Notes: generated from the sequence alone by a model not told the origin. 64,000 bases of DNA from IMGVR_UViG_3300046003_007892:124001-188000; one strand, 5' to 3'; shown: positions 1 through 63,140, counted from the stretch's first letter. Numbers and translations are program-made.

Positions 1-219
1 GGTCTGGTGGCTGAGATAAAACGAGATGCAGTCCGTGTGGGTCTCGAAGTTGACGGTGAAAATCAGGAAAGCGTCATCGGCCACGGAGATGACGTCAATG
101 TCCTTGAACTGATACCACAAGGTCTGCCCGCGATACCTAGAGCGTACTTCGCAGAAATCTTTCACGCTGCCGGTCATATAGAACCGGTAGGCAAACGGTT
201 CTCCGGTCTCGAACTTCAC
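1..219 (-). CDS. Hypothetical protein, 3'-truncated by window edge; member of small F-x4-D-x3-F-x-L family
   Basis: GTG at 219 overlaps the TGA of 216..446; open to the window edge; contains NFETHTDCISFYLSH. Confidence 0.6.
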   Translation of the reverse strand, partial: MKFETGEPFAYRFYMTGSVKDFCEVRSRYRGQTLWYQFKDIDVISVADDAFLIFTVNFETHTDCISFYLSHQT

Positions 220-446
220 TGGCCGACCATCTTGATGTGGCTGATTCGACATTCGGCGGCGTGACGGAGGAAGAACTCGACGGCGGCAGCCTCGCTCTCG
301 AACTCTTTGTTCACGACGAAATAAATCGTGCTGTCTTCCTCTACAATGGTTCCCTTGGTGAGACCAGTGGTGACGAGGACATCGACATCCCCGGTGAGAA
401 ACATGTCCTTCAACGGTCGCAAAAAGAACCGATACCGGTAGGCCAT
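216..446 (-). CDS. Hypothetical protein (small-family member)
   Basis: ATG 446 in ATGA overlap with upstream stop; EFESEAAAVEFFLRH. Confidence 0.7.
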   Translation of the reverse strand: MAYRYRFFLRPLKDMFLTGDVDVLVTTGLTKGTIVEEDSTIYFVVNKEFESEAAAVEFFLRHAAECRISHIKMVGQ

Positions 447-931
447 CAGTCTTCGGTGTTCTCGGTCAGCCCCATGAGCATGACGAGTCGCTCCCATTGG
501 CCCCGGTAGTCGTCGTTAGCCAGGATGGCGTCGAGCATGATCTGGAAGTCGCAACCCTTCTCGGCCGCGTTCAGGATGTTGGTCACCATGTCGATGTCGG
601 ACTGGTTGTTCTCCGTCGAGGCAAGCTCGCTGTCGAGTTCCTCTGACCGGGTAAACTGCCAACGCAGAGGGATTCGCCGCTCTAGCCCGCCCATGGAGAG
701 CATATTGAAGAAATTGCTGACCCGCTCGTTATTGCTACGCAGAAGAGCCACGTGTTCGGCGTGCTGGGACTTCAGTCTCGTGATCTCCGACATCCACCGT
801 TGCTCGGCGGCCTGCTCGATGGCGAAAGTGTCGGGAGTCTGCGAGGCCATCTGGATGAGGGCGGCGCGGAGATCATCAGAGCCGCCCTGCGAGTTGAGGG
901 CGTCGTTCATGTCGTCGTTGGTTTGGGTCAT
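446..931 (-). CDS. Hypothetical protein
   Basis: 161-aa ORF, AAGGA SD, coupled to the downstream ORF. Confidence 0.7.
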   Translation of the reverse strand: MTQTNDDMNDALNSQGGSDDLRAALIQMASQTPDTFAIEQAAEQRWMSEITRLKSQHAEHVALLRSNNERVSNFFNMLSMGGLERRIPLRWQFTRSEELDSELASTENNQSDIDMVTNILNAAEKGCDFQIMLDAILANDDYRGQWERLVMLMGLTENTED

Positions 932-951
932 TCGTCCTTTCGGCCGACGAC

Positions 952-1263
952 TTAAGCGGTCGGCTCGGTGGTGATCTTCACGCTATGCTGGCCGTGTTGG
1001 GCGCAGAAAGCGGTAGCGCGATCAACGCGCTGGTTTGCGACTTCACGGGGGTAGGTCCCCACGGTGGCGCGCTTCTTGTCCTGAATGGTCGCCGCCAGGG
1101 ACTTGGCCTCGGAGGCTTCCTTGTAGAAGATGGCCGCCAGCAGGGCGATCAGGAACTGCGGCGGCGCCGGGGTTCCATCCTCATTGTGAACGATGACGCG
1201 CCACAGCTTCGGCATCGAGAGCCGTTGCTTGGTACGGGATTCGGTCATCGTATCGTCGGACAA
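952..1263 (-). CDS. clpS: ClpS-like protease adaptor (divergent)
   Basis: PKLWRVIVHNEDGT...IF...A...ATVGTYPREVA...KITTEP follows the ClpS pattern; start could be ATG 1248. Confidence 0.8.
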   Translation of the reverse strand: MSDDTMTESRTKQRLSMPKLWRVIVHNEDGTPAPPQFLIALLAAIFYKEASEAKSLAATIQDKKRATVGTYPREVANQRVDRATAFCAQHGQHSVKITTEPTA

Positions 1264-1320
1264 GGGACACCTCTGAAAAACTTGAAATCAGAGCATGACC
1301 CCAAAACGCGATTTGGTCAA

Positions 1321-1352
1321 CTAAAAAAGACGGCCCCGAGAGGCCGCCTCCT
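1321..1352 (-). terminator. Intrinsic terminator after rpsU
   Basis: Minus strand GGCGGCC-tctcgg-GGCCGTC followed by T6. Confidence 0.85.
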
Positions 1353-1579
1353 TATGCGTTCTCGGCAGCGAGACGCTTGGCTTTGGCGACCCGGCGCGTG
1401 CCTTCGGCTGCCTTGCGACGACGAACCGTGGACGGTTTCTCGAAGAATTGGCGAGCACGAATTTCCTTGAGAATGCCCTCTTGCTTGACCTTGCGGTTCA
1501 GCAAACGGATGGCCTTCTCAATGTTGTTGTTGCGGACTTCGACCAGAAGGCCCCGCTTTTCAAAAGACTTTACAGCCAC
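1352..1579 (-). CDS. rpsU: Ribosomal protein bS21
   Basis: VEVRNNNIEKAIRLLNRKVKQEGILKEIRARQFFEKPSTVRRRK; GGAG SD; GTG start. Confidence 0.95.
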   Translation of the reverse strand: MAVKSFEKRGLLVEVRNNNIEKAIRLLNRKVKQEGILKEIRARQFFEKPSTVRRRKAAEGTRRVAKAKRLAAENA

Positions 1580-1620
1580 GAAAATAACTCCAAGTATTAC
1601 CCCTGCGGCAATACTATGAA

Positions 1621-1650
1621 ATTATAGGTCTTTACTGTATTGGTTGTCAA
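1621..1650 (-). promoter_or_regulatory. Sigma70-type promoter for rpsU
   Basis: TTGACA-N18-TATAAT on minus strand. Confidence 0.8.
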
Positions 1651-1653
1651 ATA

Positions 1654-2190
1654 TTATTGATGGCGTTCTTTGTAGATGTCAGCCTTCGACTTGACCGGAG
1701 CCAGGACGGCTTGCATGTCGCGACCACCATCGGCGAGGGGTTTGTCGAGCTTGTGCTCTCCGACCATCCCAAGGAAGGAATCGACTGTCGCTCGACCGAT
1801 ATCCTTGTGGGCCCGTTCGCGGCCACGGAAGCGGACCACGATCTTGACCTTGTTGCCTTCAGCGAGGAACCCTGCGGCCCGCTTCGCCTTGACGAGAAGA
1901 TCGTTGTCGTCGGTGCCCGGCCGTAGCTGAACTTCCTTGACCTCAATCGTTAGCTCCCGCTGGCGGCGGGCAAGCTCTCGCTCCTGTTTCTTTTTCTCGA
2001 AGACAAACTTCCCGGCGTCCATGATGCGGCAGACCGGGATATCCCCGCTCCCGATTTGAACAACGTCAAGGCCTTGGTGGCGGGCACTGTTGAGGGCTTC
2101 CTTCAACAGATACACACCCATCTGCTTGCCGCTGTCATCTACCAACCGGACCTTCAGGGCCCGGATTTTATCATTCACGAATACGCTCAC
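1654..2190 (-). CDS. infC: Translation initiation factor IF-3
   Basis: VNDKIRALKVRLVD...VCRIMDAGKF...KEVQLRPGTDDND...NKVKIVVRFRGRE; GTG start. Confidence 0.97.
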   Translation of the reverse strand: MSVFVNDKIRALKVRLVDDSGKQMGVYLLKEALNSARHQGLDVVQIGSGDIPVCRIMDAGKFVFEKKKQERELARRQRELTIEVKEVQLRPGTDDNDLLVKAKRAAGFLAEGNKVKIVVRFRGRERAHKDIGRATVDSFLGMVGEHKLDKPLADGGRDMQAVLAPVKSKADIYKERHQ

Positions 2191-2198
2191 GCGAGAGT

Positions 2199-3479
2199 TT
2201 AGCTTTCTACTACGACTGGGGTTGGGGTTGGCTCCACCGGCTTAGTCGGCCCAGTCGGGGAGTGTTCGAGGTGCGGTTGCTCGTGATTGGTCACGACGCC
2301 CTCGTGGACCCGAACCGTTCCGACGCCGTCGTTGCGGAGATCGGGAAGGCGGAACTGGGTCTTCATCAGGATAGTTTCGATGACGCTGCGGAGGCCGCGT
2401 GCGCCGGTCTTTTGGTCGATGGCCCGCTTGGCGATAGCCAGGAGGGCGTTGTCTTCGAAGACGAGATCGACTTCGTCGATCTTGAACAGCTTGGCGAACT
2501 GACGGATGACCGCGTTCTTCGGCTTGGTGAGGATGTGGACCAGTTGCTCCTCAGAGAGTTCATCGAGCACGGCGATGACCGGTAGGCGGCCAACCATTTC
2601 AGGGATGAGGCCGAACTTGACGAGATGGCTGGGCTGGATGTGGACCATGACTTCCGACAGCGGGCGATTGCCCTTGGCGCCGACGTTTGAAGCCGAGAAC
2701 CCGATGGTCGCGCCGGATTTCTCCATGTCCTTCTGAACGACCTTGTCGAGACCGACGAAGGCGCCGCCAACGATGAACAGGATGTTCTTGGTGTTGATCT
2801 TGATCATCGTGTGGTTGGCATTCTTCTTGCCACCCGAAGGAGGAACGTAAACTTCCGAGCCTTCGATGATCTTCAGCAGGGCCTGCTGCACGCCCTCGCC
2901 CGACACGTCGCGCGTTCCTGAGCCGCCAGCTTCCTTGGCTTTTTTCTTGTCGATCTCGTCGATGTAGATGATGCCCCGCTCGGCTTTCTCGACGTCGTGG
3001 TTGCACGACTGAAGGAGACGAGTGATGATCGACTCGACGTCGTCACCCACGTATCCGGCTTCGGTCAGCGAGGTCGCATCGGCGATGGCGAACGGGACGT
3101 CCAGGTAACGGGCGATGGACTGGGCGATCAGAGTCTTGCCCGAGCCAGTCGGGCCCAGCAAGAGGATGTTGGATTTTTCGATTTCGACGTCGTCGATGAT
3201 CGGATATTCAAGACGCTTGTAGTGGTTGTAGACCGCTACGGCGAGGGTCTCTTTGGCCGAATCCTGGCCGATGACGTATTGGTCGAGATGGTCTTTGATT
3301 GTCTGAGGGGTGGGGAGGGATTTCTTTTCCACCTCTTCGTTGGATTTGACCGTCTCGTTCATGACGGAGAGGCAAAGGTTTACGCACTCATCACAGATAT
3401 AGACACTGGGTCCGGCGATCAACTTTTTCACTTCCGTTGCGCTCTTCGAGCAGAAGGAGCAGTGCAGGGAATCAGACAT
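2199..3479 (-). CDS. clpX: ClpX AAA+ unfoldase
   Basis: Zn finger CSFC..ICDEC, Walker [36 protein letters not shown] loop, TGARGLR. Confidence 0.98.
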
Positions 3480-3509
3480 TTCAAATCCTTACTGGGAATA
3501 CTGTAGTAG

Positions 3510-3516
3510 TATTTAG
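3510..3516 (-). promoter_or_regulatory. Late-type promoter CTAAATA upstream of clpX
   Basis: Motif recurs 13 times upstream of genes; here followed by an SD-containing leader. Confidence 0.65.
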
Positions 3517-3546
3517 GAAAGCCGAGGCGGCTTCAATAATTACGAC

Positions 3547-4752
3547 CTAGGACGGGTCATTATCCCGTGGTTGAAAGTTTTCAGCCGTAAGCCACCCAGT
3601 ATCGACCATTTCTTGCTCAGATTTGTCGCTTTCGTGAACGGCGGCGACAATTTCTTCCAGGAGGTGAGGATTGTTTTCCAGGATGGTAAGCACCTGTTCC
3701 TTGGCCGATACTGAACTTTCTTCGGCAACTGTGGACTGAATTTCCGGCTCAGCTTCGGGTGTGTCCGCTACCGTATCGTCTTGACTCGCCAGAGCTTCTT
3801 TGGCAGCGATTTCAAAAATCGATGGTTCCTGGAGGAATGCCGATAGGCGTTCGTTCGGTGCCGGGACGAGTGGGATGACATCCTCGTAGGAAACCGGTCG
3901 TTCATCTTCCGGGATGAAGTCGTCCTCTGGGGAATCTTCTTCGATGACATCGGTCTCGCTGAGGTCTTCCTCGACTGGTTCCTGAACGGCTTCCACGACC
4001 ACCGGCTTCGGTTGGCGAGAACGTGACCATTCTCCAAGCGTGATCGTGCCTGAGATCATCAGGACGATAGCCAGAGGGTCGAAGGCGAACATCAGTGTTC
4101 CGATGACGGCTTGAACGGCTGCCGTGGGGTCTTTGAAGCCCATGGTGGTCAGGGGGCCCAGCTTGGCGGTGGCGGCGTTGGCCTGACTCCGCAAAGGTGC
4201 CATCTCGACGTTCTTGGCGGTGATCTGCGCGTTCAGGGCGGCGATCTCTCTGGAGATGCGATCACGGTCCCGGCGTTGTTGGCTCATGAACGTCGTTGCG
4301 CCCCTGGCCGAGCCGCCCGCAAGATAGGTGTCCACGGTCTTGTTGATGTTGGCTTGCTGGCGTTCCAGTTCCGTCCGTTGGGCGAGCAACTGGTCAAGTT
4401 GAGCCTGATGACTTTCAACCTGCATCGTGATCTCGGCCGCAGGCGCCTTCTGGTCGAGATGGGCCTTCATCAGATAGCCGTAGATGCCCAAGCTCGTGAT
4501 CAGCATCAGGGCGATGACCGCTGCGCAGAGGTAGAAGCGGTGGAACTTGCTGACGAGGGGGTTCTTCCAGTTGGAATGGACCCAACCCGCAGCGACGAGC
4601 TTGCTGACTTCGAGGACGACGCCCATGATGGCGACCGGCAAGAATGCAGCCGAGAACAAAGCAGCCAGTCCGACCACGCTGAAATAAGCCGCAACAGCGG
4701 AGATCGCCACGGCACAAAACAGGGTCAAGGACCCGACGAGAAGTTTTTGCAA
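3547..4752 (-). CDS. Membrane protein with coiled coil and acidic tail
   Basis: N-terminal hydrophobic helices, Q/E-rich heptads, further TM segment, D/E-rich C-terminus; start uncertain. Confidence 0.75.
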   Translation of the reverse strand: MQKLLVGSLTLFCAVAISAVAAYFSVVGLAALFSAAFLPVAIMGVVLEVSKLVAAGWVHSNWKNPLVSKFHRFYLCAAVIALMLITSLGIYGYLMKAHLDQKAPAAEITMQVESHQAQLDQLLAQRTELERQQANINKTVDTYLAGGSARGATTFMSQQRRDRDRISREIAALNAQITAKNVEMAPLRSQANAATAKLGPLTTMGFKDPTAAVQAVIGTLMFAFDPLAIVLMISGTITLGEWSRSRQPKPVVVEAVQEPVEEDLSETDVIEEDSPEDDFIPEDERPVSYEDVIPLVPAPNERLSAFLQEPSIFEIAAKEALASQDDTVADTPEAEPEIQSTVAEESSVSAKEQVLTILENNPHLLEEIVAAVHESDKSEQEMVDTGWLTAENFQPRDNDPS

Positions 4753-4756
4753 AGGT

Positions 4757-5143
4757 TTAGCCTTCTTTCACCAAAGTCAGGCCATGCTCACGATCAAGGA
4801 ACTTGTATTCAACCTTGACTGTCTCAAACACGCCTAGAGCTTCGATCACCATATCTGTGTCTAGCTCAGAGCAGGTGTAAAGATCAAATTGAAGAACAGC
4901 CGGAACGCATTCGTCCCATGAGTGCATGCCGATGTGGCTAGTCTCAATGATGGCGTCGGCGGTCAGTCCACGATTACCTTCTACTGGACAATAACGTGCA
5001 CGCGGCGCGGCGAGTTCTTTCATCCCGATATCCTTGATCAGCTTGGACATCCAAGCACAAACAGCGGCAATGTCCTTCTCCAGCGGAGGATTCATGACCT
5101 CGGCGCGGACAATGAGGTGTTGGTGGCGGTTATCGGGTGTCAT
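4757..5143 (-). CDS. speD: Pyruvoyl-dependent AdoMet decarboxylase-like proenzyme
   Basis: IIETSHIGMHSWDE...FDLYTC matches the ESH.S.HTWPE...DxFTC pattern. Confidence 0.85.
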   Translation of the reverse strand: MTPDNRHQHLIVRAEVMNPPLEKDIAAVCAWMSKLIKDIGMKELAAPRARYCPVEGNRGLTADAIIETSHIGMHSWDECVPAVLQFDLYTCSELDTDMVIEALGVFETVKVEYKFLDREHGLTLVKEG

Positions 5144-5212
5144 TATTCGTGAACGACCTCTCTAAAAGTAGTGGAACCGGAAATACTATCTAGGTTGTAG
5201 TATAGGTGCGAA

Positions 5213-5743
5213 TTAAATCGCGGTGACTGTGATGGCCGCTTCGGCTGCGGCAAGGTTTGCCGCCAGAGAACCCACGTCGATCTTCTCGATGCGAGTGCCA
5301 AAGCGGGCAACGTTGGTCGTGAGGCCAGCGTCATTCTCGGAGGCGGTTGCGGTGGGGTCGAAATAGTCTCCAGACTCGATACGGTTCGTCAGCAGAGAGC
5401 GGGCGATCACGCGCTTGAGCGCAGCGGCGCCGACCAGACCTTCGGCAGCCAAGCAATCCTCGCCGTGTTCGCTCACCAGAGTGAACGCGAACGTGGTGGC
5501 GTCCGTGTTGGCGTCAGCGTCCGACGTCACCGAGGTGACGTAGAGGTTGCCCATCATGCCCAGCATCCCGATCATCATTTCGTAGCGGGAGTTGCCGCGT
5601 TCCTTGGCGAGAGATGCGGCAACATCGGCAGCGAAATCGTCTTCGGCCATGTATTGTTCGATTTTTTTATTGTCGATGAAACCGTCGCCATCGGTTGCCC
5701 CGACCAGCGTTGTGATTTCAACTTCATAGGTTTTGCTCGCCAT
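5213..5743 (-). CDS. Hypothetical protein, probably virion structural
   Basis: Ala/Thr-rich ORF with GGAG SD, downstream of ATAAATA. Confidence 0.7.
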   Translation of the reverse strand: MASKTYEVEITTLVGATDGDGFIDNKKIEQYMAEDDFAADVAASLAKERGNSRYEMMIGMLGMMGNLYVTSVTSDADANTDATTFAFTLVSEHGEDCLAAEGLVGAAALKRVIARSLLTNRIESGDYFDPTATASENDAGLTTNVARFGTRIEKIDVGSLAANLAAAEAAITVTAI

Positions 5744-5768
5744 GGGGTATCTCCAGAATCCAGTCAGT

Positions 5769-5775
5769 TATTTAT
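5769..5775 (-). promoter_or_regulatory. Late-type promoter ATAAATA
   Basis: Recurrent motif. Confidence 0.6.
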
Positions 5776-5862
5776 CGTAATGCACTGTCCACGATTGTAT
5801 TTTGACTGTCGGGACTCTGCTTTGATAAATGGTTTGCAGACACCCTGTGTAAACGAGACCTA

Positions 5863-7731
5863 ATGACAACGACCAAAGAGTGGAAAAAGCTCAGCCCATA
5901 TCAACAAGCCCGCCAACGGACAGAGATGTGGCTAGGCTCACGCGACCCCCATACGCAATCCATTCTCGAATATACCGAGGATGGACCGGTCTCGGTTTCG
6001 ACGACCTGGGTCCCGGCCCTGTTCACCGCGTTCCGCGAACTCTTCGACAACGCTCTCGACGAAGTCGTCTCGCACGGCAACGGTGACCGCATCGACGTCA
6101 GCTATGATGAGACCAGCAAGGTGTTCAGCATCCGAGACAACGGACGCGGTGTCCCCATCGAATGGGACGAGACCGAACAGAAATATGCCGCCACCGTCCT
6201 CCTATCTGAGCAGAACGCGGGACGGAACTTCGAGGATGACCGTGGTGCGACTCGCGGTCTGAATGGCGTCGGCGGCGCCGTGGTCAATTTCACCTCGGAA
6301 TATTTCCTCGCACACATCATTCGTGGCGGTCAGTCCTTCACCCAGAGGTTCGTCGAAGGTTTGGAGCACGTCGCCGAAGACCCCGTCATCCTTCCGGCCA
6401 AGAAATCCGACGTCAACGGGACCCGCATCGAGTTCAAGCTCTCGAAGAAAGTCTTCAAGGACATGCGCCTGCCCGAATCGTTCATTCGTTCGCGAATGTT
6501 CGAGGCCGCCCTCTGCTACCCGAATCTCAAGATTTTCTACAACGGCAAGCAGGTGAAAACGCGCGGCGTCGAGAAAGACCTGTTCCCGAAAAGGAAGCCC
6601 ATCACGGTCGAGATCGACGAGCCCGGTTTCCGCTCACGCTTCTGGTTGGTCCCGCAGTTCTTTGCCGATGGAACCGAGACCTCCCACAGTCTCGTCAACG
6701 CCATCCCGATGTTCAATGGCGGCGTGCACATCGACACCTTCAAGCGGATGTTCTTCTCCGGGCTCATCAACGCGCTGGCCAAGGAATCGAAAAAGCGCAA
6801 GCTGACGCCGAACCGCTCCGACCTCGCGGACGGAATGCTGATCTACAACATCACCGAGATGGATGCCCCGCATTTCGACAGCCAGTCGAAGACCCGAGTC
6901 ATCAACGAAGGGGTGAACAAGATCGTCACCGCCGCGCTCGACAACCCGGATTTCTTCAAGAACGTCATCCGCAAAAATGGTGAATGGATTGAGGACGTCT
7001 ACAAGCGGTGCGCCGAGCGGACCCTGAAGAAAGAATCGTCGGAAATCTCCAAGCTGGCCAAGAAGGGCGGCAAGGTCCGCGTGGCCAAACTCAAGGACGC
7101 CACCCACTCCGACCGCCAGCAGTGCAGCCTCTACATCACCGAGGGCGATTCGGCCGTTGGTGGTCTCGTCGATGCCCGCGACGCCCGCATCCATGCCGCC
7201 ATGCCCCTGAAGGGGAAGGTGATGAATGTGCACGGCATGTCGCCCAAGCAGATTTACGAGAACGAAGAACTGGCCAGGATGATGAACGCCATCGGGCTCG
7301 TGCCCGGCCAGCGCGTGAACCGCCATCTGCTCCGCTATGGCCGCGTCTACATCACCTGCGACGCCGACGAGGACGGTAAGTCGATCACCGGCCTGCTGAC
7401 CAACTTCTTCTACCTGAACTGGCCGGAGCTTTTCGAGGCCGACCGCCCGTTCATCCACGTCTTCGACACCCCGCTCATCATTGCGGCGAAAGGCAAAGAG
7501 CGGAAGTATTGGTACGCCGACAATGAGCACACGTTCAAGCAGGAAGATTTCAAGGGCTGGGAGATCACCCGTGCCAAGGGTCTGGCCCAGTTGAAGAAAC
7601 CGGACTGGCAGTTCGCGCTCAATAATCCGAAGTCCATCCCGCTCACCGATGACGGCGACCTCAATGCCGCCTTGTCACTGATCTTTGACCCCAAAAAAGC
7701 CGACGCCCGCAAAGAGTGGATTGGCATCTAA
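5863..7731 (+). CDS. DNA topoisomerase II large (ATPase+TOPRIM) subunit, T4 gp39/60-like
   Basis: FRELFDNALDE, DNGRGVP, GLNGVG, EGDSA, PLKGK, DADEDG. Confidence 0.97.
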   Translation: MTTTKEWKKLSPYQQARQRTEMWLGSRDPHTQSILEYTEDGPVSVSTTWVPALFTAFRELFDNALDEVVSHGNGDRIDVSYDETSKVFSIRDNGRGVPIEWDETEQKYAATVLLSEQNAGRNFEDDRGATRGLNGVGGAVVNFTSEYFLAHIIRGGQSFTQRFVEGLEHVAEDPVILPAKKSDVNGTRIEFKLSKKVFKDMRLPESFIRSRMFEAALCYPNLKIFYNGKQVKTRGVEKDLFPKRKPITVEIDEPGFRSRFWLVPQFFADGTETSHSLVNAIPMFNGGVHIDTFKRMFFSGLINALAKESKKRKLTPNRSDLADGMLIYNITEMDAPHFDSQSKTRVINEGVNKIVTAALDNPDFFKNVIRKNGEWIEDVYKRCAERTLKKESSEISKLAKKGGKVRVAKLKDATHSDRQQCSLYITEGDSAVGGLVDARDARIHAAMPLKGKVMNVHGMSPKQIYENEELARMMNAIGLVPGQRVNRHLLRYGRVYITCDADEDGKSITGLLTNFFYLNWPELFEADRPFIHVFDTPLIIAAKGKERKYWYADNEHTFKQEDFKGWEITRAKGLAQLKKPDWQFALNNPKSIPLTDDGDLNAALSLIFDPKKADARKEWIGI

Positions 7732-7734
7732 GAC

Positions 7735-9078
7735 ATGAAAACTTCAGAATATATTCTCAAGACCAACCGCGAATATTCCCTCTACGTCTGCTCGCAGCGG
7801 GCCATCCCCAATATCGAAGACGGGCTCAAACCCTCTCAGCGGATGCCGTTGTGGCTGCTGCGGAACAAGGCCGGGAAGATCAAGGTCTCGGCTCTCTCGG
7901 GCATGCTGGCGGCCGAGAAAATCTACAATCACGGTGAGATGTCGGCCAACAACGCCATCTCCCTCCTGGCGGCGCCGTTCAAGAACAACAACTGCCTCAT
8001 CGAAGGCGTCGGTATGTTCGGCAGCCGCGTGGTTCCCGATGGCATCGGGGCCCCTCGTTATGTCGAGGTCGCCCGTGCCGCCATCTCAGAGAAGGTTCTC
8101 TACCGGGACCTCGATCTCGTTCCCCAGACGGAGAACTACGACGCTTCGACCATGCAGCCCATCCACATGCTGCCCATCATCCCTCTGGTGCTCCTCAACG
8201 GCATTGAGGGCATCGCGGTCGGTTGGTCCACCTCCATCCTGCCCAGGTCTCTGAAGGCCATCGTAGACGCCAGCATCGCCGCCCTTGAAGGCAAGAAGAT
8301 CAAGACCCTGGTGCCCCACTACGGCCGGTATGACGTCAGCGTCGCGCCTCTGGCCGTCAACCAGTGGGAAATCCGTGGCAAGGTCAAGATCGAAGACACC
8401 TCGACGATTCGCGTCACCGAGCTTCCTCCGGGCCTGCACGTCGAGAACTTCCTCAAGCGTCTCGACGAGATGGAAGACCGCGATCAGATCACCGGCTTCA
8501 CCGACAACTCATCCGAGGCCATCGACATCGTCGTCCGTTTCAAGCGCGGCACCCTGAAAGCATGGGACGAGGAGTCGGCCATCGACTTCCTCAAGCTGAA
8601 GGAGAAAGTCACCGAGCGCATCACCGTCGTCGATTTCGGCGGGCAGTCCATCCGCACCTATGAGAATGCCGAAGAGGTCGTCAAGGCTTTCGTCCAGTGG
8701 CGTCTGGGTTGGTATTCAAAGCGGTTCGACAAGATGCTCGCCGACGCCGTCTATGAGGTCAACTACTGGCGAGTCCTCAAGGCCCTGTTCGATGACGGCT
8801 TCACCAAACGACTCGGCACGTTCGCCGACAGGTCAGCCGTTGAAGCCGACGTCGAAAAGGTCTCGAAGAAGGTTAAGCTCAACCTGGACGCCAAGCAGTT
8901 GGACCGTGTCGTCAACCTCCCGACCTACCGGTGGACGAAGGCGTTCGAGGCCGACGTGGATGCCAAGATCATCGACATCGACGGGGCCATCTCCGACTAT
9001 CAGGCCATTCTGTCATCGCCGGACCTCCTCAAGTCCGTCTACGCGGGGGAACTCGACGAACTGCGGAAGAAAATCTGA
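7735..9078 (+). CDS. DNA topoisomerase II breakage-reunion subunit, T4 gp52-like
   Basis: RAIPNIEDGLKPSQR, YNHGEMS, GAPRY (catalytic Tyr), LLNGIEGIAVGWST; no CTD. Confidence 0.97.
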   Translation: MKTSEYILKTNREYSLYVCSQRAIPNIEDGLKPSQRMPLWLLRNKAGKIKVSALSGMLAAEKIYNHGEMSANNAISLLAAPFKNNNCLIEGVGMFGSRVVPDGIGAPRYVEVARAAISEKVLYRDLDLVPQTENYDASTMQPIHMLPIIPLVLLNGIEGIAVGWSTSILPRSLKAIVDASIAALEGKKIKTLVPHYGRYDVSVAPLAVNQWEIRGKVKIEDTSTIRVTELPPGLHVENFLKRLDEMEDRDQITGFTDNSSEAIDIVVRFKRGTLKAWDEESAIDFLKLKEKVTERITVVDFGGQSIRTYENAEEVVKAFVQWRLGWYSKRFDKMLADAVYEVNYWRVLKALFDDGFTKRLGTFADRSAVEADVEKVSKKVKLNLDAKQLDRVVNLPTYRWTKAFEADVDAKIIDIDGAISDYQAILSSPDLLKSVYAGELDELRKKI

Positions 9079-15654: not shown

Positions 15655-15730
15655 GCGTCGTTAGCTCAGATGGTAGAGCATCGGCTTCTAACACCGAGGG
15701 TCACGGGTTCGAGTCCCGTCCGACGCGCCA
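15655..15730 (+). tRNA. tRNA with CUA anticodon (amber suppressor candidate)
   Basis: 76 nt; D stem GCTC/GAGC; anticodon stem TCGG/CCGA with C31-A39 mismatch puts CTA at 34-36 (15688-15690); T arm ACGGG/CCCGT; G73, encoded CCA. Confidence 0.85.
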
Positions 15731-28072: not shown

Positions 28073-28102
28073 GACTTCATGATGGCTCCTTACTCAGGAT
28101 TG

Positions 28103-28789
28103 TCAAGAAGAAGGAGCATCAATTCCCGCAAGTCTGGCAAGAATTTCGCAGTCGCCTACGTTGACCTCGACCAGACCCATTGCTTCGGTGCGGTCAGCGA
28201 AGCATTTGTTCGCAGCTTCGGCCACAGCGACACCCGCATCGCGCTTGCCGTTGTCATATCCCTTGCCTTGTCCGAAGTGATGACCGAGGCCGAACATGAC
28301 GGCGCAGACGAACGTCAGAAGGAGTATGCTGCTGACGATCTCAACCACGCTGTGCTCGCCGGGTTTCTTGACGACGGGCTTGGGCTTCGGGGCATTGGTG
28401 ACGAGGGCGGCAGCCGGTGACACAGCCTCATTGAGGATTTGGCGAGAGCCGGAAAGACCCAGTCGATCACCTAGAGGGCTGTAGCCGTCGCTGATCAACG
28501 GCGCGATCAGACGAAGCTTGTTCAGTTTATCGATTCGGCTGTTTTCCAGTTTGGTGACGTCGAGGAGACCGCGCTCGACCGCAAACGACGTGGCGCCGAG
28601 AACATCACCGATCTCGTCGTGGATGAGGTCCAGGTTGGTCCTCTTCGATTTGTCGTCGGGATTGTAGGAGTCGTAGCCGTGGCGGAGGGTCTTGCCGATG
28701 ATCTGCACGACTTCGCCGCACTCTTCTGACAGGACGCCGATCTCGTATTGATGAGCAAGTTTCTCGGGATGGGGATGACGATTGGACAA
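28103..28789 (-). CDS. MazG-like NTP pyrophosphohydrolase fused to a C-terminal TM region
   Basis: LSEECGEVVQIIGKTLRHG...DEIGDVL; then SILLLTFVCAVMFGLG. Confidence 0.8.
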   Translation of the reverse strand: MSNRHPHPEKLAHQYEIGVLSEECGEVVQIIGKTLRHGYDSYNPDDKSKRTNLDLIHDEIGDVLGATSFAVERGLLDVTKLENSRIDKLNKLRLIAPLISDGYSPLGDRLGLSGSRQILNEAVSPAAALVTNAPKPKPVVKKPGEHSVVEIVSSILLLTFVCAVMFGLGHHFGQGKGYDNGKRDAGVAVAEAANKCFADRTEAMGLVEVNVGDCEILARLAGIDAPSS

Positions 28790-62406: not shown

Positions 62407-62438
62407 TTACTTGACAAGTCATCGCGCTCGGCTATTGT
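62407..62438 (+). promoter_or_regulatory. Early-type promoter ACTTGACAAG-class
   Basis: TTGACA-N16-TATTGT. Confidence 0.75.
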
Positions 62439-63097: not shown

Positions 63098-63140
63098 ACT
63101 ATTTTCTTGACAAGTAATGCAGATCGACTAGATTGACGTC

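What the first reader, a model, noticed from the sequence alone, without database searches (positions are those of the whole stretch)
1352..3516. clpX-infC-rpsU-clpS block: initiation control joined to proteolysis
Seen: bS21 and IF3 are adjacent. IF3 starts with GTG and has no visible SD. bS21 has its own near-consensus TTGACA-N18-TATAAT promoter plus a terminator, while clpX-infC follow a late motif. Established: host infC usually starts with AUU and is autorepressed; bS21 affects SD-led initiation; IF3 level affects leaderless and non-canonical starts. Inference: the phage escapes IF3 autoregulation and retunes initiation for a mix of SD-led and leaderless mRNAs.
Basis: partly seen in the sequence, partly recalled or inferred. 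Interest (0 to 1): 0.6.

Follow-up and report, generated by a model that had tools for sequence, protein, structure and literature searches.

The report
Huge-phage ClpX–IF3–bS21–ClpS gene module
A roughly half-megabase phage carries its own copies of a translation initiation factor (IF3), a small ribosomal protein (bS21), the ClpX unfoldase and a ClpS-like adaptor side by side; this is a conserved module already seen in Agrobacterium phage Atu_ph07 and its relatives, so it is a real but largely known feature whose function is still untested.

Summary
On the minus strand lie clpX (3479..2199), infC (2190..1654, GTG start, no SD, 8 nt after the clpX stop), rpsU/bS21 (1579..1352) and a ClpS-like gene (1263..952). 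bS21 has a perfect TTGACA-N18-TATAAT promoter, a GGAG SD and an intrinsic terminator. clpX follows a TAAATA motif.

The window belongs to a 240-kb fragment of a roughly 0.5-Mb phage. The block is not peculiar to it. clpX directly precedes infC in 36 of 85 IF3-carrying viral loci, usually with bS21 and ClpS downstream. The same holds in cultured Agrobacterium phage Atu_ph07 and Sinorhizobium phage Phosso, and the AP-J-162 paper already notes the clpX–IF-3 adjacency.

New details:
- A canonical, mostly GTG, infC start is conserved across the clade, whereas at least 23 of 73 bacterial infC need an AUH start.
- infC overlaps or abuts clpX here and in the closest relatives.
- These IF3s share a 2-residue linker insertion.

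The genome does hold about 60 predicted leaderless genes, 47 of them TAAATA-N4-6-ATG. Seven complete relatives with the module lack that pattern. "Escapes AUU autoregulation" is therefore reasonable. "Retunes SD-led versus leaderless initiation" and "late" are unproven.

The parts
952..1263 (-). ClpS-like adaptor gene (103 aa). TTG start with a GAGGTG SD. Divergent N-degron pocket.
   Evidence: PF02617 scores 45 bits against a cut-off of 23. The best NCBIfam ClpS equivalog scores 43.9 against 112. Alignment to E. coli ClpS shows a 2-aa insertion (PAPPQF) beside the gatekeeper position, D35E, and Q in place of His66. L114 shares this derived state. L018, L019, L021 and the low-GC clade do not.
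1315..1320 (-). TTGACC, a -35-like hexamer immediately after the bS21 terminator. Possibly a weak own promoter for clpS.
   Evidence: TTGAC is conserved between the window and L114 in alignment A3. The -10 partner is poor (CATGCT), so this is inference only.
1322..1353 (-). Intrinsic terminator after bS21: a GC-rich stem-loop followed by six T.
   Evidence: dG -18.5 kcal/mol, z -3.9. It is conserved in L114 with a different stem sequence. The scan tool did not list it.
1352..1579 (-). rpsU, ribosomal protein bS21 (75 aa). GTG start. Has an N-terminal extension of about 9 aa and lacks the last six residues of E. coli bS21.
   Evidence: TIGR00030 70.6 bits, PF01165 67 bits. Alignment to E. coli bS21 pairs query residues 13-75 with chain residues 4-65. 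The extension motif FEKRGL is shared with L018 and other relatives.
1584..1625 (-). bS21 leader hairpin, with the GGAG SD at 1591..1588. The inner stem (1614..1594) would sit at the 5' end of the promoter-derived transcript. The outer stem pairs the -10 region with the SD, so it can form only in read-through RNA from upstream.
   Evidence: dG -18.0 kcal/mol, z -6.4 for 1625..1580. The inner hairpin alone gives -10.5. L114 has an equivalent hairpin with changed stem bases. Any regulatory role is inference.
1621..1650 (-). Sigma-70 consensus promoter of bS21: TTGACA, N18, TATAAT.
   Evidence: 12 of 12. It is the only exact match in 240 kb, with 0.019 expected. It is identical in the near-identical strain L117, degenerate in L114, and absent in more distant relatives.
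1654..2190 (-). infC, translation initiation factor IF3 (178 aa from GTG 2190, or 174 aa from GTG 2178). No SD. The start lies 8 nt downstream of the clpX stop.
   Evidence: IF3_N plus IF3_C, TIGR00168 157 bits. It aligns with E. coli IF3 residues 15-179, with R99, K110, R129, R131, R133 and H137 kept. All bacterially conserved columns are kept, and the linker has a 2-aa insertion.
2199..3479 (-). clpX, the AAA+ unfoldase of ClpXP (426 aa). ATG start with an AAGGA SD at 3490..3486.
   Evidence: NF003745 581 bits; zf-C4_ClpX and AAA_2 domains. The C4 zinc finger, Walker A GPTGSGKT, pore loop GYVG and IGF loop can be read in the translation. The RKH loop is KKN. ClpP is encoded about 9 kb away at G000:115293-115832, outside the window.
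3510..3515 (-). TAAATA promoter-like motif, 31 nt upstream of the clpX ATG.
   Evidence: 67 of 90 genomic copies are intergenic. There is a sharp spacing peak of TAAATA-N4-ATG: 34 copies against 0 for the reversed control. This copy is of the leadered kind.
3518..3534 (-). Hairpin between the upstream gene's stop (TAG at 3549..3547) and the TAAATA motif. It has no T-run, so it is a doubtful terminator.
   Evidence: dG -11.4 kcal/mol, z -3.3.

Best explanation
This is the local copy of a conserved auxiliary module of Atu_ph07-like huge phages (0.42-0.57 Mb). The order is clpX, infC, rpsU, sometimes hsp20, then clpS, and the module sits next to the phage type II topoisomerase genes.

Shown here:
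- All four genes are intact, and clpX, infC and rpsU look canonical.
- The clpX-linked IF3s cluster together on the tree (branch support 83), share a derived 2-residue linker insertion, and are at most about 47% identical to any cellular IF3.
- clpX immediately precedes infC throughout.

Inferred expression plan in this phage:
1. clpX is transcribed from a TAAATA element and translated from an AAGGA SD.
2. infC has no SD of its own. Ribosomes terminating on clpX translate it, restarting at a GTG 8 nt downstream, so the IF3 dose follows ClpX and is not subject to AUU-based IF3 autorepression.
3. bS21 is a separate unit with a consensus sigma-70 promoter, a 5' hairpin, a GGAG SD, a GTG start and a terminator. 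The unmodified host RNA polymerase can therefore make it.
4. clpS follows with its own SD.

Inferred function: phage IF3 and bS21 load onto host 30S subunits to keep up, or bias, initiation capacity during a long and protein-heavy infection. ClpXP, whose ClpP is encoded 9 kb away, and the ClpS-like adaptor remodel the proteome. The genes sit together because they are inherited and expressed as one host-takeover and proteostasis island, not because a mechanistic link between them has been shown.
For: - Gene identities.
- Record type: a virus record of 240,363 bp, 45% complete.
- Synteny: clpX-infC in 36 of 85 viral IF3 loci, with bS21 and clpS downstream. The flanks are the same in L018, L019, L021 and L115: gyrB-like, AdoMet_dc, and DUF2201.
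- Cultured phages: Atu_ph07 and Phosso share topoisomerase, clpX and infC. Atu_ph07 also has bS21, Hsp20 and ClpS.
- Tree: the clpX-linked IF3s cluster together, with the window inside an 18-row clade at 96% SH-aLRT. They share a linker insertion that 79 of 80 bacterial IF3s lack.
- Not a host operon: bacterial infC loci lack a neighbouring clpX. At most 1-3 of 80 have one, with weak scores.
- Coupling: an 8-nt gap here, and 4-8 nt overlaps in L018, L019, L114 and L115.
- GTG or TTG start conserved in clade A.
- Promoter, terminator and leader hairpin.
- ClpP in the same genome.
- Literature: Al-Shayeb 2020 (PMC7162821); Chen 2022 (PMC9723584); the AP-J-162 paper (PMC11242549); Iyer 2021 (PMC7824862).
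Against: - No expression, ribosome-binding or activity data exist for any member.
- Promoter classes are consensus matches only, so timing is unknown.
- Coupling is inferred from spacing alone. Subclade A2 and the cultured phages instead give infC its own TTGACA promoter and a strong SD, so coupling is not universal.
- The ClpS-like gene of this lineage has lost pocket residues, and no ClpA was found in the fragment. Its role is open.
- Tight clpX-infC linkage held over such divergence could reflect a functional link that this explanation leaves out.
Confidence: 0.6

Rival explanations
1. Phage IF3 and bS21 are selectivity factors that retune host ribosomes for this phage's mix of SD-led and leaderless mRNAs, for example by switching between the two classes over time or by tolerating 5'-terminal AUGs.
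For: - The genome has about 47 TAAATA-N4-6-ATG genes and 14 sigma-70-like promoters whose -10 ends 5-7 nt before ATG. Many other genes carry an SD peaking at -12 to -9.
- E. coli literature says that excess IF3 antagonises leaderless initiation (recalled from the literature, not re-read here).
- Ribosomes lacking bS21 and uS2 favour leaderless lambda cI mRNA (PMC10491246).
- The phage-clade IF3 has a longer interdomain linker.
Against: - The module is present in seven complete relatives of 417-524 kb, including Atu_ph07 and Phosso. These have only 0-6 TAAATA-N4-ATG sites, which is chance level.
- Both promoter classes contain leaderless and leadered genes alike, so an IF3 or bS21 dose change would not separate early genes from late ones.
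- Every IF3 residue conserved in bacteria is kept.
- If phage IF3 behaved like E. coli IF3, it would inhibit rather than help the phage's many leaderless genes.
Confidence: 0.17
2. Replacement coupled to proteolysis. Phage ClpXP, with the ClpS-like adaptor, removes host initiation components or ribosome-bound factors, and the phage supplies resistant IF3 and bS21. This would explain why clpX and infC are kept fused into one translational unit.
For: - clpX-infC adjacency, often with overlapping stop and start, is held across IF3 divergence down to about 36% identity and in more than 30 lineages.
- The arrangement is not a bacterial operon.
- ClpP is phage-encoded.
- The ClpX RKH loop (KKN) and the ClpS pocket are altered in this lineage, hinting at changed substrate choice.
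Against: - No substrate is known.
- Subclades keep the canonical RKH loop and ClpS pocket yet have the same synteny.
- Adjacency can be explained by co-expression alone.
- bS21 is lost from, or moved about 3 kb away within, the block in several relatives.
Confidence: 0.1
3. ClpX serves DNA replication or remodelling next to the topoisomerase genes, as ClpX does with lambda O or Mu transposase. This is what the AP-J-162 authors proposed. On this view IF3 and bS21 are merely neighbouring auxiliary genes.
For: The block abuts, in divergent orientation, the type II topoisomerase subunits in the window (5863-9078) and in all relatives. The proposal appears in PMC11242549.
Against: - The topoisomerase genes are on the opposite strand and are separated from the block by 3-4 other genes.
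- ClpP, ClpS and Hsp20 in the same genomes point to general proteostasis.
- This idea does not explain the translational fusion with infC.
Confidence: 0.08
4. Recently captured host genes (morons) with no phage-specific role.
For: All four are cellular housekeeping families.
Against: - No cellular IF3 exceeds about 47% identity, while phage relatives reach 76%.
- The clade is old, syntenic and intact.
- The gene order is unlike bacterial thrS-infC-rpmI-rplT or clpP-clpX (operon orders from general knowledge).
Confidence: 0.03

Closest known systems
Agrobacterium phage Atu_ph07 (Polybotosvirus, 490 kb), Sinorhizobium phage Phosso (469 kb) and Sinorhizobium phage AP-J-162: the region from the topoisomerase genes through ClpX, IF-3, S21, Hsp20 and ClpS
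   Same: - The order and orientation match: topo IV A and the topoisomerase large subunit diverge from x-clpX-infC. Atu_ph07 then continues with bS21, Hsp20 and ClpS.
- infC starts with GTG.
- IF3 is 42-46% identical, and the sheath-like structural protein is 40-41% identical.
- The clpX/IF-3 adjacency and the S21/IF-3 'translation redirecting' idea are already in print (PMC11242549).
   Different: - In the cultured phages, infC has its own TTGACA promoter and AAGGAG SD 60-70 nt after clpX. Here infC has no SD and sits 8 nt after the clpX stop.
- Phosso has no bS21 in the block.
- This phage has no Hsp20 in the block or in the fragment.
- Its bS21 carries a perfect sigma-70 promoter.
- Its ClpS pocket and ClpX RKH loop are derived.
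- Its genome has the TAAATA-N4-ATG architecture, which the cultured phages lack.
Translation genes of huge phages (Al-Shayeb et al. 2020, PMC7162821) and viral ribosomal proteins (Mizuno et al. 2019, PMC6375957)
   Same: IF3 and bS21 are encoded by phages larger than 200 kb. bS21 has a basic and aromatic N-terminal extension. The proposed role is to intercept host initiation.
   Different: Those papers list the genes. As far as read here, they do not describe the conserved clpX-infC unit, its start codon or its coupling.
bS21-encoding phages with late bS21 expression (Chen et al. 2022, PMC9723584)
   Same: A phage bS21 with Hsp20 and Clp protease genes among its frequent neighbours.
   Different: In those phages bS21 sits among structural genes and is expressed late, and the paper does not mention IF3. 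Here bS21 has a host-type consensus promoter, which suggests host-polymerase and possibly early expression. That timing is untested.
E. coli thrS-infC-rpmI-rplT operon with an AUU start and IF3 autorepression
   Same: The same protein family with both domains. The key basic residues of the C-terminal domain are kept.
   Different: The start is canonical GTG rather than AUU. The operon partners are different. There is no own SD. Among 73 bacterial loci, 23 require an AUH start, whereas none of the clpX-linked phage genes does.
T4 late promoters (TATAAATA, gp55) and the leaderless transcripts of the jumbo phages phiKZ and AR9
   Same: An A/T-rich -10-only element, TAAATA, lies upstream of many genes including a tail sheath. 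A large share are predicted leaderless. Leaderless transcripts in phiKZ and AR9 are indexed in PMC8244752 and PMC5312081 (the abstracts were listed but the papers were not read in full).
   Different: Only six bases are conserved, and the two bases before them vary. No gp55 homologue was found in the fragment. Transcription starts are not mapped.

Membership tests
Bacterial translation initiation factor IF3 (infC) | N-terminal and C-terminal IF3 domains joined by a basic linker, with an equivalog-level profile match | tested here: met
   PF05198 83.5 bits, PF00707 86.1 bits, TIGR00168 157 bits against a cut-off of 60.
Bacterial translation initiation factor IF3 (infC) | Conserved residues of the 30S-binding C-terminal domain (E. 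coli R99, K110, R129, R131, R133, H137) | tested here: met
   Pairwise alignment to E. coli IF3 (8jsg_A). All columns that are at least 85% conserved in 80 bacterial IF3s are kept in the phage clade. Y107 is Leu and R116 is Gly in the window. The functional weight of those two residues is recalled from memory only.
Bacterial translation initiation factor IF3 (infC) | Non-canonical AUU/AUC/AUA start that underlies autorepression. This is a feature of the gene's regulation, not of the protein. | tested here: not met
   The start is GTG, and there is no in-frame ATH upstream of the conserved motif. 23 of 73 bacterial loci need an ATH start.
Bacterial translation initiation factor IF3 (infC) | Binds the 30S subunit, prevents subunit association and proofreads the start codon | not testable with these tools
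   Needs biochemistry.
Ribosomal protein bS21 (rpsU) | S21 profile match over the two-helix core | tested here: met
   TIGR00030 70.6 bits against 28.95; PF01165 67.4 bits. Aligns with E. coli bS21 residues 4-65.
Ribosomal protein bS21 (rpsU) | Incorporation into the host 30S platform next to the anti-SD | not testable with these tools
   Not tested. The protein has an N-terminal extension of about 9 aa and lacks the last six residues of E. coli bS21.
ClpX (ClpXP unfoldase) | C4 zinc finger, a single AAA+ module with Walker A and B, the GYVG pore loop, and the IGF loop that docks on ClpP | tested here: met
   NF003745 581 bits against 359; PF06689 61 bits. The motifs can be read in the translation.
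ClpX (ClpXP unfoldase) | RKH loop, used for ssrA-tag recognition in E. coli (its role is recalled from memory) | tested here: not met
   The window has KKN. L018 and L021 have RKN. Subclades A2 and B keep RKH.
ClpX (ClpXP unfoldase) | A ClpP partner is available | tested here: met
   PF00574 269.6 bits at G000:115293-115832. A host ClpP is also likely.
ClpS (N-degron adaptor of ClpAP) | ClpS fold or profile | tested here: met
   PF02617 45.4 bits against 23. The NCBIfam equivalogs are not reached (43.9 against 112).
ClpS (N-degron adaptor of ClpAP) | N-degron pocket residues (E. coli N34, D35, D36, M40, H66) | tested here: not met
   D35 is Glu, a 2-aa insertion lies before the M40 position, and H66 is Gln. 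L114 is the same, whereas L018, L019, L021 and the low-GC clade are canonical.
ClpS (N-degron adaptor of ClpAP) | A ClpA partner | tested here: inconclusive
   No ClpA was found in the 240-kb fragment, but the record is only about 45% complete. Atu_ph07 encodes a ClpA (PMC7824862).
Atu_ph07-like huge-phage clpX-infC module | clpX immediately upstream of infC on the same strand, beside divergent type II topoisomerase genes, with bS21, Hsp20 and ClpS downstream | tested here: met
   Hsp20 is missing here.
T4-type late transcription | A TATAAATA -10 element and a gp55-like sigma factor | tested here: inconclusive
   Only TAAATA is conserved. T4 gp55 and phrog_234 find nothing in the fragment. The fragment is incomplete, and the phrog control matched nowhere.
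Leaderless mRNAs | Transcription starts at or within a few nt of the start codon | tested here: inconclusive
   The sequence pattern is strong: TAAATA-N4/5/6-ATG occurs 34, 10 and 3 times against 0 for the control, and 14 sigma-70-like -10 elements end 5-7 nt before ATG. No transcript 5' ends could be obtained.

The most novel reading that the evidence does not exclude
The clpX-linked phage IF3, marked by its 2-residue longer linker and conserved GUG start, would be a functionally shifted initiation factor. It would be made in fixed proportion to ClpX, replace host IF3 on 30S subunits, and tolerate or favour 5'-terminal start codons. In this lineage that would allow roughly 60 phage genes to be expressed as leaderless mRNAs from TAAATA and sigma-70-like promoters, while phage bS21, made from a host-type promoter, resets SD use.
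Probability: 0.1. Interest if true: 0.75.

Novelty: new member of a known kind. Interest (0 to 1): 0.38.

Why it matters
Why large phages carry initiation factors and ribosomal proteins is an open question, and nobody has shown what a phage IF3 does.

This analysis shows that IF3 in one big lineage is not a stray gene. It is the second cistron of a clpX-infC unit kept for a very long time, and it has a canonical GUG start where many bacteria have an autoregulatory AUH.

The same module sits in cultured phages with tractable hosts: Atu_ph07 on Agrobacterium tumefaciens C58, and Phosso and AP-J-162 on Sinorhizobium. That makes the function directly testable.

The window's own phage adds a natural contrast, with the same module in a genome rich in predicted leaderless genes. 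For this window alone the finding is mostly confirmation of a known module.

Tried and rejected
- Megablast of the block against GenBank phages found no match.
- A single-protein IF3 scan of viral contigs found none. An alignment-based scan was needed.
- Rfam found nothing in 1-6000.
- Host assignment stayed ambiguous. Named cellular best hits are scattered: Planctomycetota, Gammaproteobacteria and Spirochaetes for IF3, Verrucomicrobiaceae for ClpX, and many phyla at 38-47% identity. The only usable hint is kinship with Rhizobiaceae phages.
- The bS21 consensus promoter is not conserved beyond the near-identical strain. It cannot be called a clade feature.
- The idea that TAAATA-N4-ATG leaderless genes go with the IF3 module was rejected, because seven complete relatives lack the pattern.
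- The phage does not supply an initiator tRNA in this fragment. Both tRNA(CAU) genes have a paired 1-72 end and no GGG/CCC anticodon stem.
- ClpA, Hsp20, L7/L12, IF1 and gp55 were not found in the fragment. This is inconclusive at 45% completeness.
- About ten TAAATA hits of the form ...GTCAAGTAAATA are the reverse complement of the sigma-70-like TTTACTTGACAAG motif. They should not be counted as TAAATA promoters.
- Structure prediction, complex prediction and the large representative search were not run. Family scans and the word search had already settled the identities, and no binding claim is made.
Full report
WHAT IS THERE

The window is bases 124001-188000 of a 240,363-bp IMG/VR virus record that CheckV rates 45% complete. 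That makes it a fragment of a phage of roughly half a megabase.

Four genes lie on the minus strand at the left end:
- clpX, 3479..2199, 426 aa. NF003745 scores 581 bits against a cut-off of 359. It has a C4 zinc finger and an AAA+ module.
- infC, 2190..1654, 178 aa. It has IF3_N and IF3_C domains. TIGR00168 scores 157 bits against 60.
- rpsU (bS21), 1579..1352, 75 aa. TIGR00030 scores 70.6 bits against 29.
- A ClpS-like gene, 1263..952, 103 aa. PF02617 scores 45 bits against 23, but the gene stays below every NCBIfam ClpS equivalog.

ClpP is encoded about 9 kb away, outside the window. The block diverges from the two type II topoisomerase subunits at 5863-9078. On the other side, an AAA_5-like protein and a DUF2201 metallopeptidase/VWA protein follow.

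CHECK OF THE OBSERVATION

Every sequence statement holds.

infC can start only at GTG 2190 or GTG 2178. No in-frame ATT, ATC or ATA lies upstream, and no SD sits at a usable distance.

bS21 has TTGACA-N18-TATAAT at 1650..1621, scoring 12 of 12. This is the single exact match in the record, where 0.019 are expected. bS21 also has a GGAG SD 9 nt before its GTG. A stem-loop with six T follows the stop, with dG -18.5 and z -3.9. The simple scanner did not list this terminator.

TAAATA lies at 3515..3510, 31 nt before the clpX ATG, with an AAGGA SD between them. TAAATA is a genuine signal of this genome. Of its 90 copies, 67 are intergenic while only 19% of the record is intergenic. Its distance to ATG peaks sharply: N4 occurs 34 times, N5 10 times and N6 3 times, against 0 for the reversed control.

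WHAT IT IS

The block is not peculiar to this phage.

IF3 relatives at 50-76% identity lie on contigs up to 570 kb, while cellular IF3s reach about 47% at most. Neighbourhoods of the relatives L018 (570 kb), L019 (373 kb), L021 (485 kb), L114 and L115 show the same order. A gyrB-like gene and AdoMet_dc come first, then clpX, infC, bS21 (absent from L021), Hsp20 or Phage_ABA_S in some, ClpS, and finally DUF2201.

An alignment-based scan of IMG/VR gave 80 more IF3 loci. Across all 85 loci, 36 have clpX directly upstream of infC on the same strand. About 30 have bS21 downstream, either adjacent or about 3 kb away, with ClpS 0.8-2 kb beyond.

On an IF3 tree the clpX-linked genes cluster together. 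The tree is the quick version with SH-aLRT support only, because the careful search did not finish. The window sits in an 18-row clade at 96%, and a second, low-GC clade sits next to it. A separate group of 32 phage IF3s has no clpX. The clpX-linked IF3s share a 2-residue insertion in the interdomain linker that 79 of 80 bacterial IF3s lack. Every column strongly conserved in bacteria is kept.

Bacterial infC loci do not have clpX next door. At most 1-3 of 80 do, with weak scores. The unit therefore looks assembled in phages rather than captured from a host operon.

Cultured phages carry it too. Agrobacterium phage Atu_ph07 (490 kb, Polybotosvirus) and Sinorhizobium phage Phosso (469 kb) have the topoisomerase genes, clpX and infC in the same arrangement. 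Atu_ph07 continues across its record origin with an unannotated bS21 (67.5 bits), Hsp20 and ClpS. A sheath-like structural protein of the window also hits these two phages best, at 40-41% identity. The phage is thus a distant member of the Atu_ph07-like huge phages, and an alphaproteobacterial host is a reasonable guess but no more than that.

WHAT IS ALREADY IN PRINT

- Al-Shayeb 2020 lists IF1, IF3, S1 and S21 in huge phages. It notes basic N-terminal extensions on S21 and proposes interception of host translation.
- Chen 2022 links phage bS21 to late expression. It finds Hsp20 and Clp proteases among bS21's common neighbours but does not mention IF3.
- The AP-J-162 paper states that clpX is directly adjacent to IF-3 and the topoisomerase genes. 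It repeats the translation-redirecting idea for S21, L7/L12 and IF-3.
- Iyer 2021 lists Atu_ph07 ClpA, ClpX, ClpS and IF3.
- No paper held all four of the terms phage, ClpX, ClpS and infC together.

NEW DETAILS FOUND HERE

1. A conserved canonical start. Across clade A, infC starts at GTG (TTG in L021 and L034) at one conserved position. This includes the annotated Atu_ph07 gene and Phosso. The low-GC clade uses ATG. In contrast, 23 of 73 bacterial infC loci have no ATG, GTG or TTG anywhere between the upstream stop and the conserved N-terminus, so they must start at AUU, AUC or AUA.

2. Two solutions for initiating infC. In the window and its closest relatives the start overlaps or abuts the clpX stop. 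The gap is 8 nt here, and L018, L019, L114 and L115 overlap by 4-8 nt with GTGA-type junctions. That is the signature of translational coupling. In subclade A2 and in the cultured phages, infC has its own TTGACA promoter and a strong GAAAGGA or AAGGAG SD, yet still starts with GTG.

3. The bS21 unit. The perfect promoter is identical only in a near-identical strain (L117). It is degenerate in L114 and absent further out. The terminator and a 5' hairpin recur in L114 with different stem bases. In the window the extended hairpin (dG -18.0, z -6.4) pairs the -10 region with the SD. It can therefore form only in RNA read through from infC, not in the promoter's own transcript. A role in discriminating the two transcripts is inference.

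4. Lineage-specific drift of the proteolysis parts. The ClpS-like protein of the window and of L114 has a 2-aa insertion beside the gatekeeper position and has lost the His66 equivalent. Other relatives keep the canonical pocket. The ClpX RKH loop is KKN here and RKN in L018 and L021, while RKH is kept in subclades A2 and B.

THE LEADERLESS QUESTION

An SD peak exists at -12 to -9. At the same time, 34 of 52 TAAATA-associated genes and 14 of 32 genes with sigma-70-like promoters have the -10-like element ending 4-7 nt before the start codon. The sigma-70-like consensus is about TTTACTTGACAAG-N16-TAtnnT.

The TAAATA class includes a tail sheath (phrog_11196). It also includes an RNA ligase and a cytidylyltransferase/NUDIX protein. 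The sigma-70-like class includes GroEL and NAD synthetase. 'Late' is therefore plausible for TAAATA but not shown. No gp55-like sigma was found in the fragment.

Seven complete relatives that carry the module were checked: five IMG/VR genomes of 417-524 kb, plus Atu_ph07 and Phosso. They have only 0-6 TAAATA-N4-ATG sites each, which is chance level. The module is therefore older than this leaderless architecture and cannot have arisen to serve it. They could still have come to work together in this lineage.

From E. coli work, extra IF3 and bS21 should disfavour leaderless mRNAs. The IF3 part is recalled from the literature, and the bS21 part comes from PMC10491246. That would hurt many of this phage's own genes, unless the phage IF3 behaves differently. 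Nothing in its conserved residues suggests that it does. The longer linker is the only clade-specific mark.

MOST LIKELY WORKING

- Shown: intact clpX, infC and rpsU that look canonical, plus a divergent ClpS-like gene; conserved synteny; a canonical start codon; coupling-type spacing; a consensus promoter and a terminator around bS21; and ClpP in the genome.
- Inferred: clpX-infC is one transcription and translation unit behind TAAATA, so the IF3 dose tracks ClpX and escapes AUU-based autorepression. bS21 can be made by unmodified host RNA polymerase. Both proteins load onto host 30S subunits to sustain or bias initiation. ClpXP and the ClpS-like adaptor remodel the proteome.

I give this composite reading 0.6. 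A proteolysis-coupled replacement model gets 0.1, a replication role for ClpX 0.08, and passive carriage 0.03.

LIMITS

Gene calls outside the block come from a simple codon-usage caller that I wrote. Promoter calls are consensus matches. The record is about half a genome, so the absences of ClpA, Hsp20, L7/L12, IF1 and gp55 are inconclusive. The host is unknown.

VERDICT

The block is a new member of a known huge-phage module, and its clpX-IF-3 adjacency has been noted in print. Its value lies in the comparative details (the conserved GUG start, coupling to clpX, and the linker insertion) and in pointing to cultured relatives where the function of phage IF3 and bS21 can be tested.

Noticed in passing
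whole record G000; examples in the window: 44649 (tail sheath), 26570 (-), 35710, 39231: About 47 genes have TAAATA followed by 4-6 nt and then ATG (34, 10 and 3 copies against 0 for the reversed control), so they are predicted leaderless mRNAs. Seven complete relatives, including Atu_ph07 and Phosso, have only chance numbers of this pattern.
   Followed up: partly
leaderless TAAATA genes across G000, e.g. window 26570 (-), 30803 (-), 39231 (+); L111:801, L111:1625: Roughly 20 of 45 of these proteins begin with a similar peptide, M-R-x-[YFL]-[IL]-[DN]-[LI]-x-E-[ST], although BLAST does not group them as paralogues. 20 of the 34 N4 genes have Arg (CGN) as the second codon. This could be a sorting or recognition signal, or a 5' coding feature that helps leaderless initiation.
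   Followed up: partly
G000, e.g. window 62407..62438, 63103..63134, 28079..28110 (-): There is a second promoter class, TTTACTTGACAAG-N16-TAtnnT. The CTTGACAAG core is a 9-bp palindrome, and 14 of 32 sites are placed for leaderless starts. The reverse complement of its upstream part reads GTAAATA, which contaminates simple TAAATA counts.
   Followed up: partly
window 15655-15730 (+): A tRNA with anticodon CUA (amber-suppressor type; ARAGORN labels it Pyl) has a good cloverleaf and an encoded CCA. TAG still ends 76 of 314 crude gene calls, so no general recoding is evident. The fragment carries 24 tRNA genes in all.
   Followed up: partly
G000:41602-41676 (-) and 64682-64756 (-), outside the window: Two tRNA(CAU) genes look like elongator Met or Ile2 types. 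Their 1-72 ends are paired and they have no GGG/CCC anticodon stem. The phage therefore does not appear to bring an initiator tRNA, at least in this fragment.
   Followed up: yes
window 952-1263 (-) and L114:1000-1305: The ClpS of this sub-lineage has a 2-aa insertion next to the gatekeeper position and has lost the His66 equivalent. Sister phages keep the canonical N-degron pocket. The adaptor may have been repurposed.
   Followed up: partly
window about 2750-2830 (-), inside clpX: The ClpX RKH loop reads KKN here and RKN in L018 and L021, while RKH is retained in other subclades of the same module.
   Followed up: partly
window 1584-1625 (-): A strong hairpin (dG -18, z -6.4) joins the bS21 -10 region to its SD. 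Only read-through RNA from infC could form the full stem. L114 has an analogous hairpin with different stem bases.
   Followed up: partly
L203:6100-6408 (-), which is MF403008.1 about 489096-489347: The Atu_ph07 ORF annotated 'hypothetical protein' in GenBank record MF403008.1 matches the phage bS21 profile (67.5 bits). It lies about 900 nt downstream of IF3 across the record origin.
   Followed up: yes
window 4757-5143 (-); L110:306-3049 (-): An S-adenosylmethionine decarboxylase-like gene lies upstream of the block. An AAA_5-like protein plus a DUF2201 metallopeptidase/VWA pair lies downstream. Both are conserved in relatives.
   Followed up: no
L121 (Ruminococcus bromii MAG contig) and L129 (Eubacteriales MAG contig): Two contigs labelled bacterial have a ClpX-like ORF (L121) or a bS21 gene (L129) beside infC. 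They may be phage contigs binned into MAGs.
   Followed up: no
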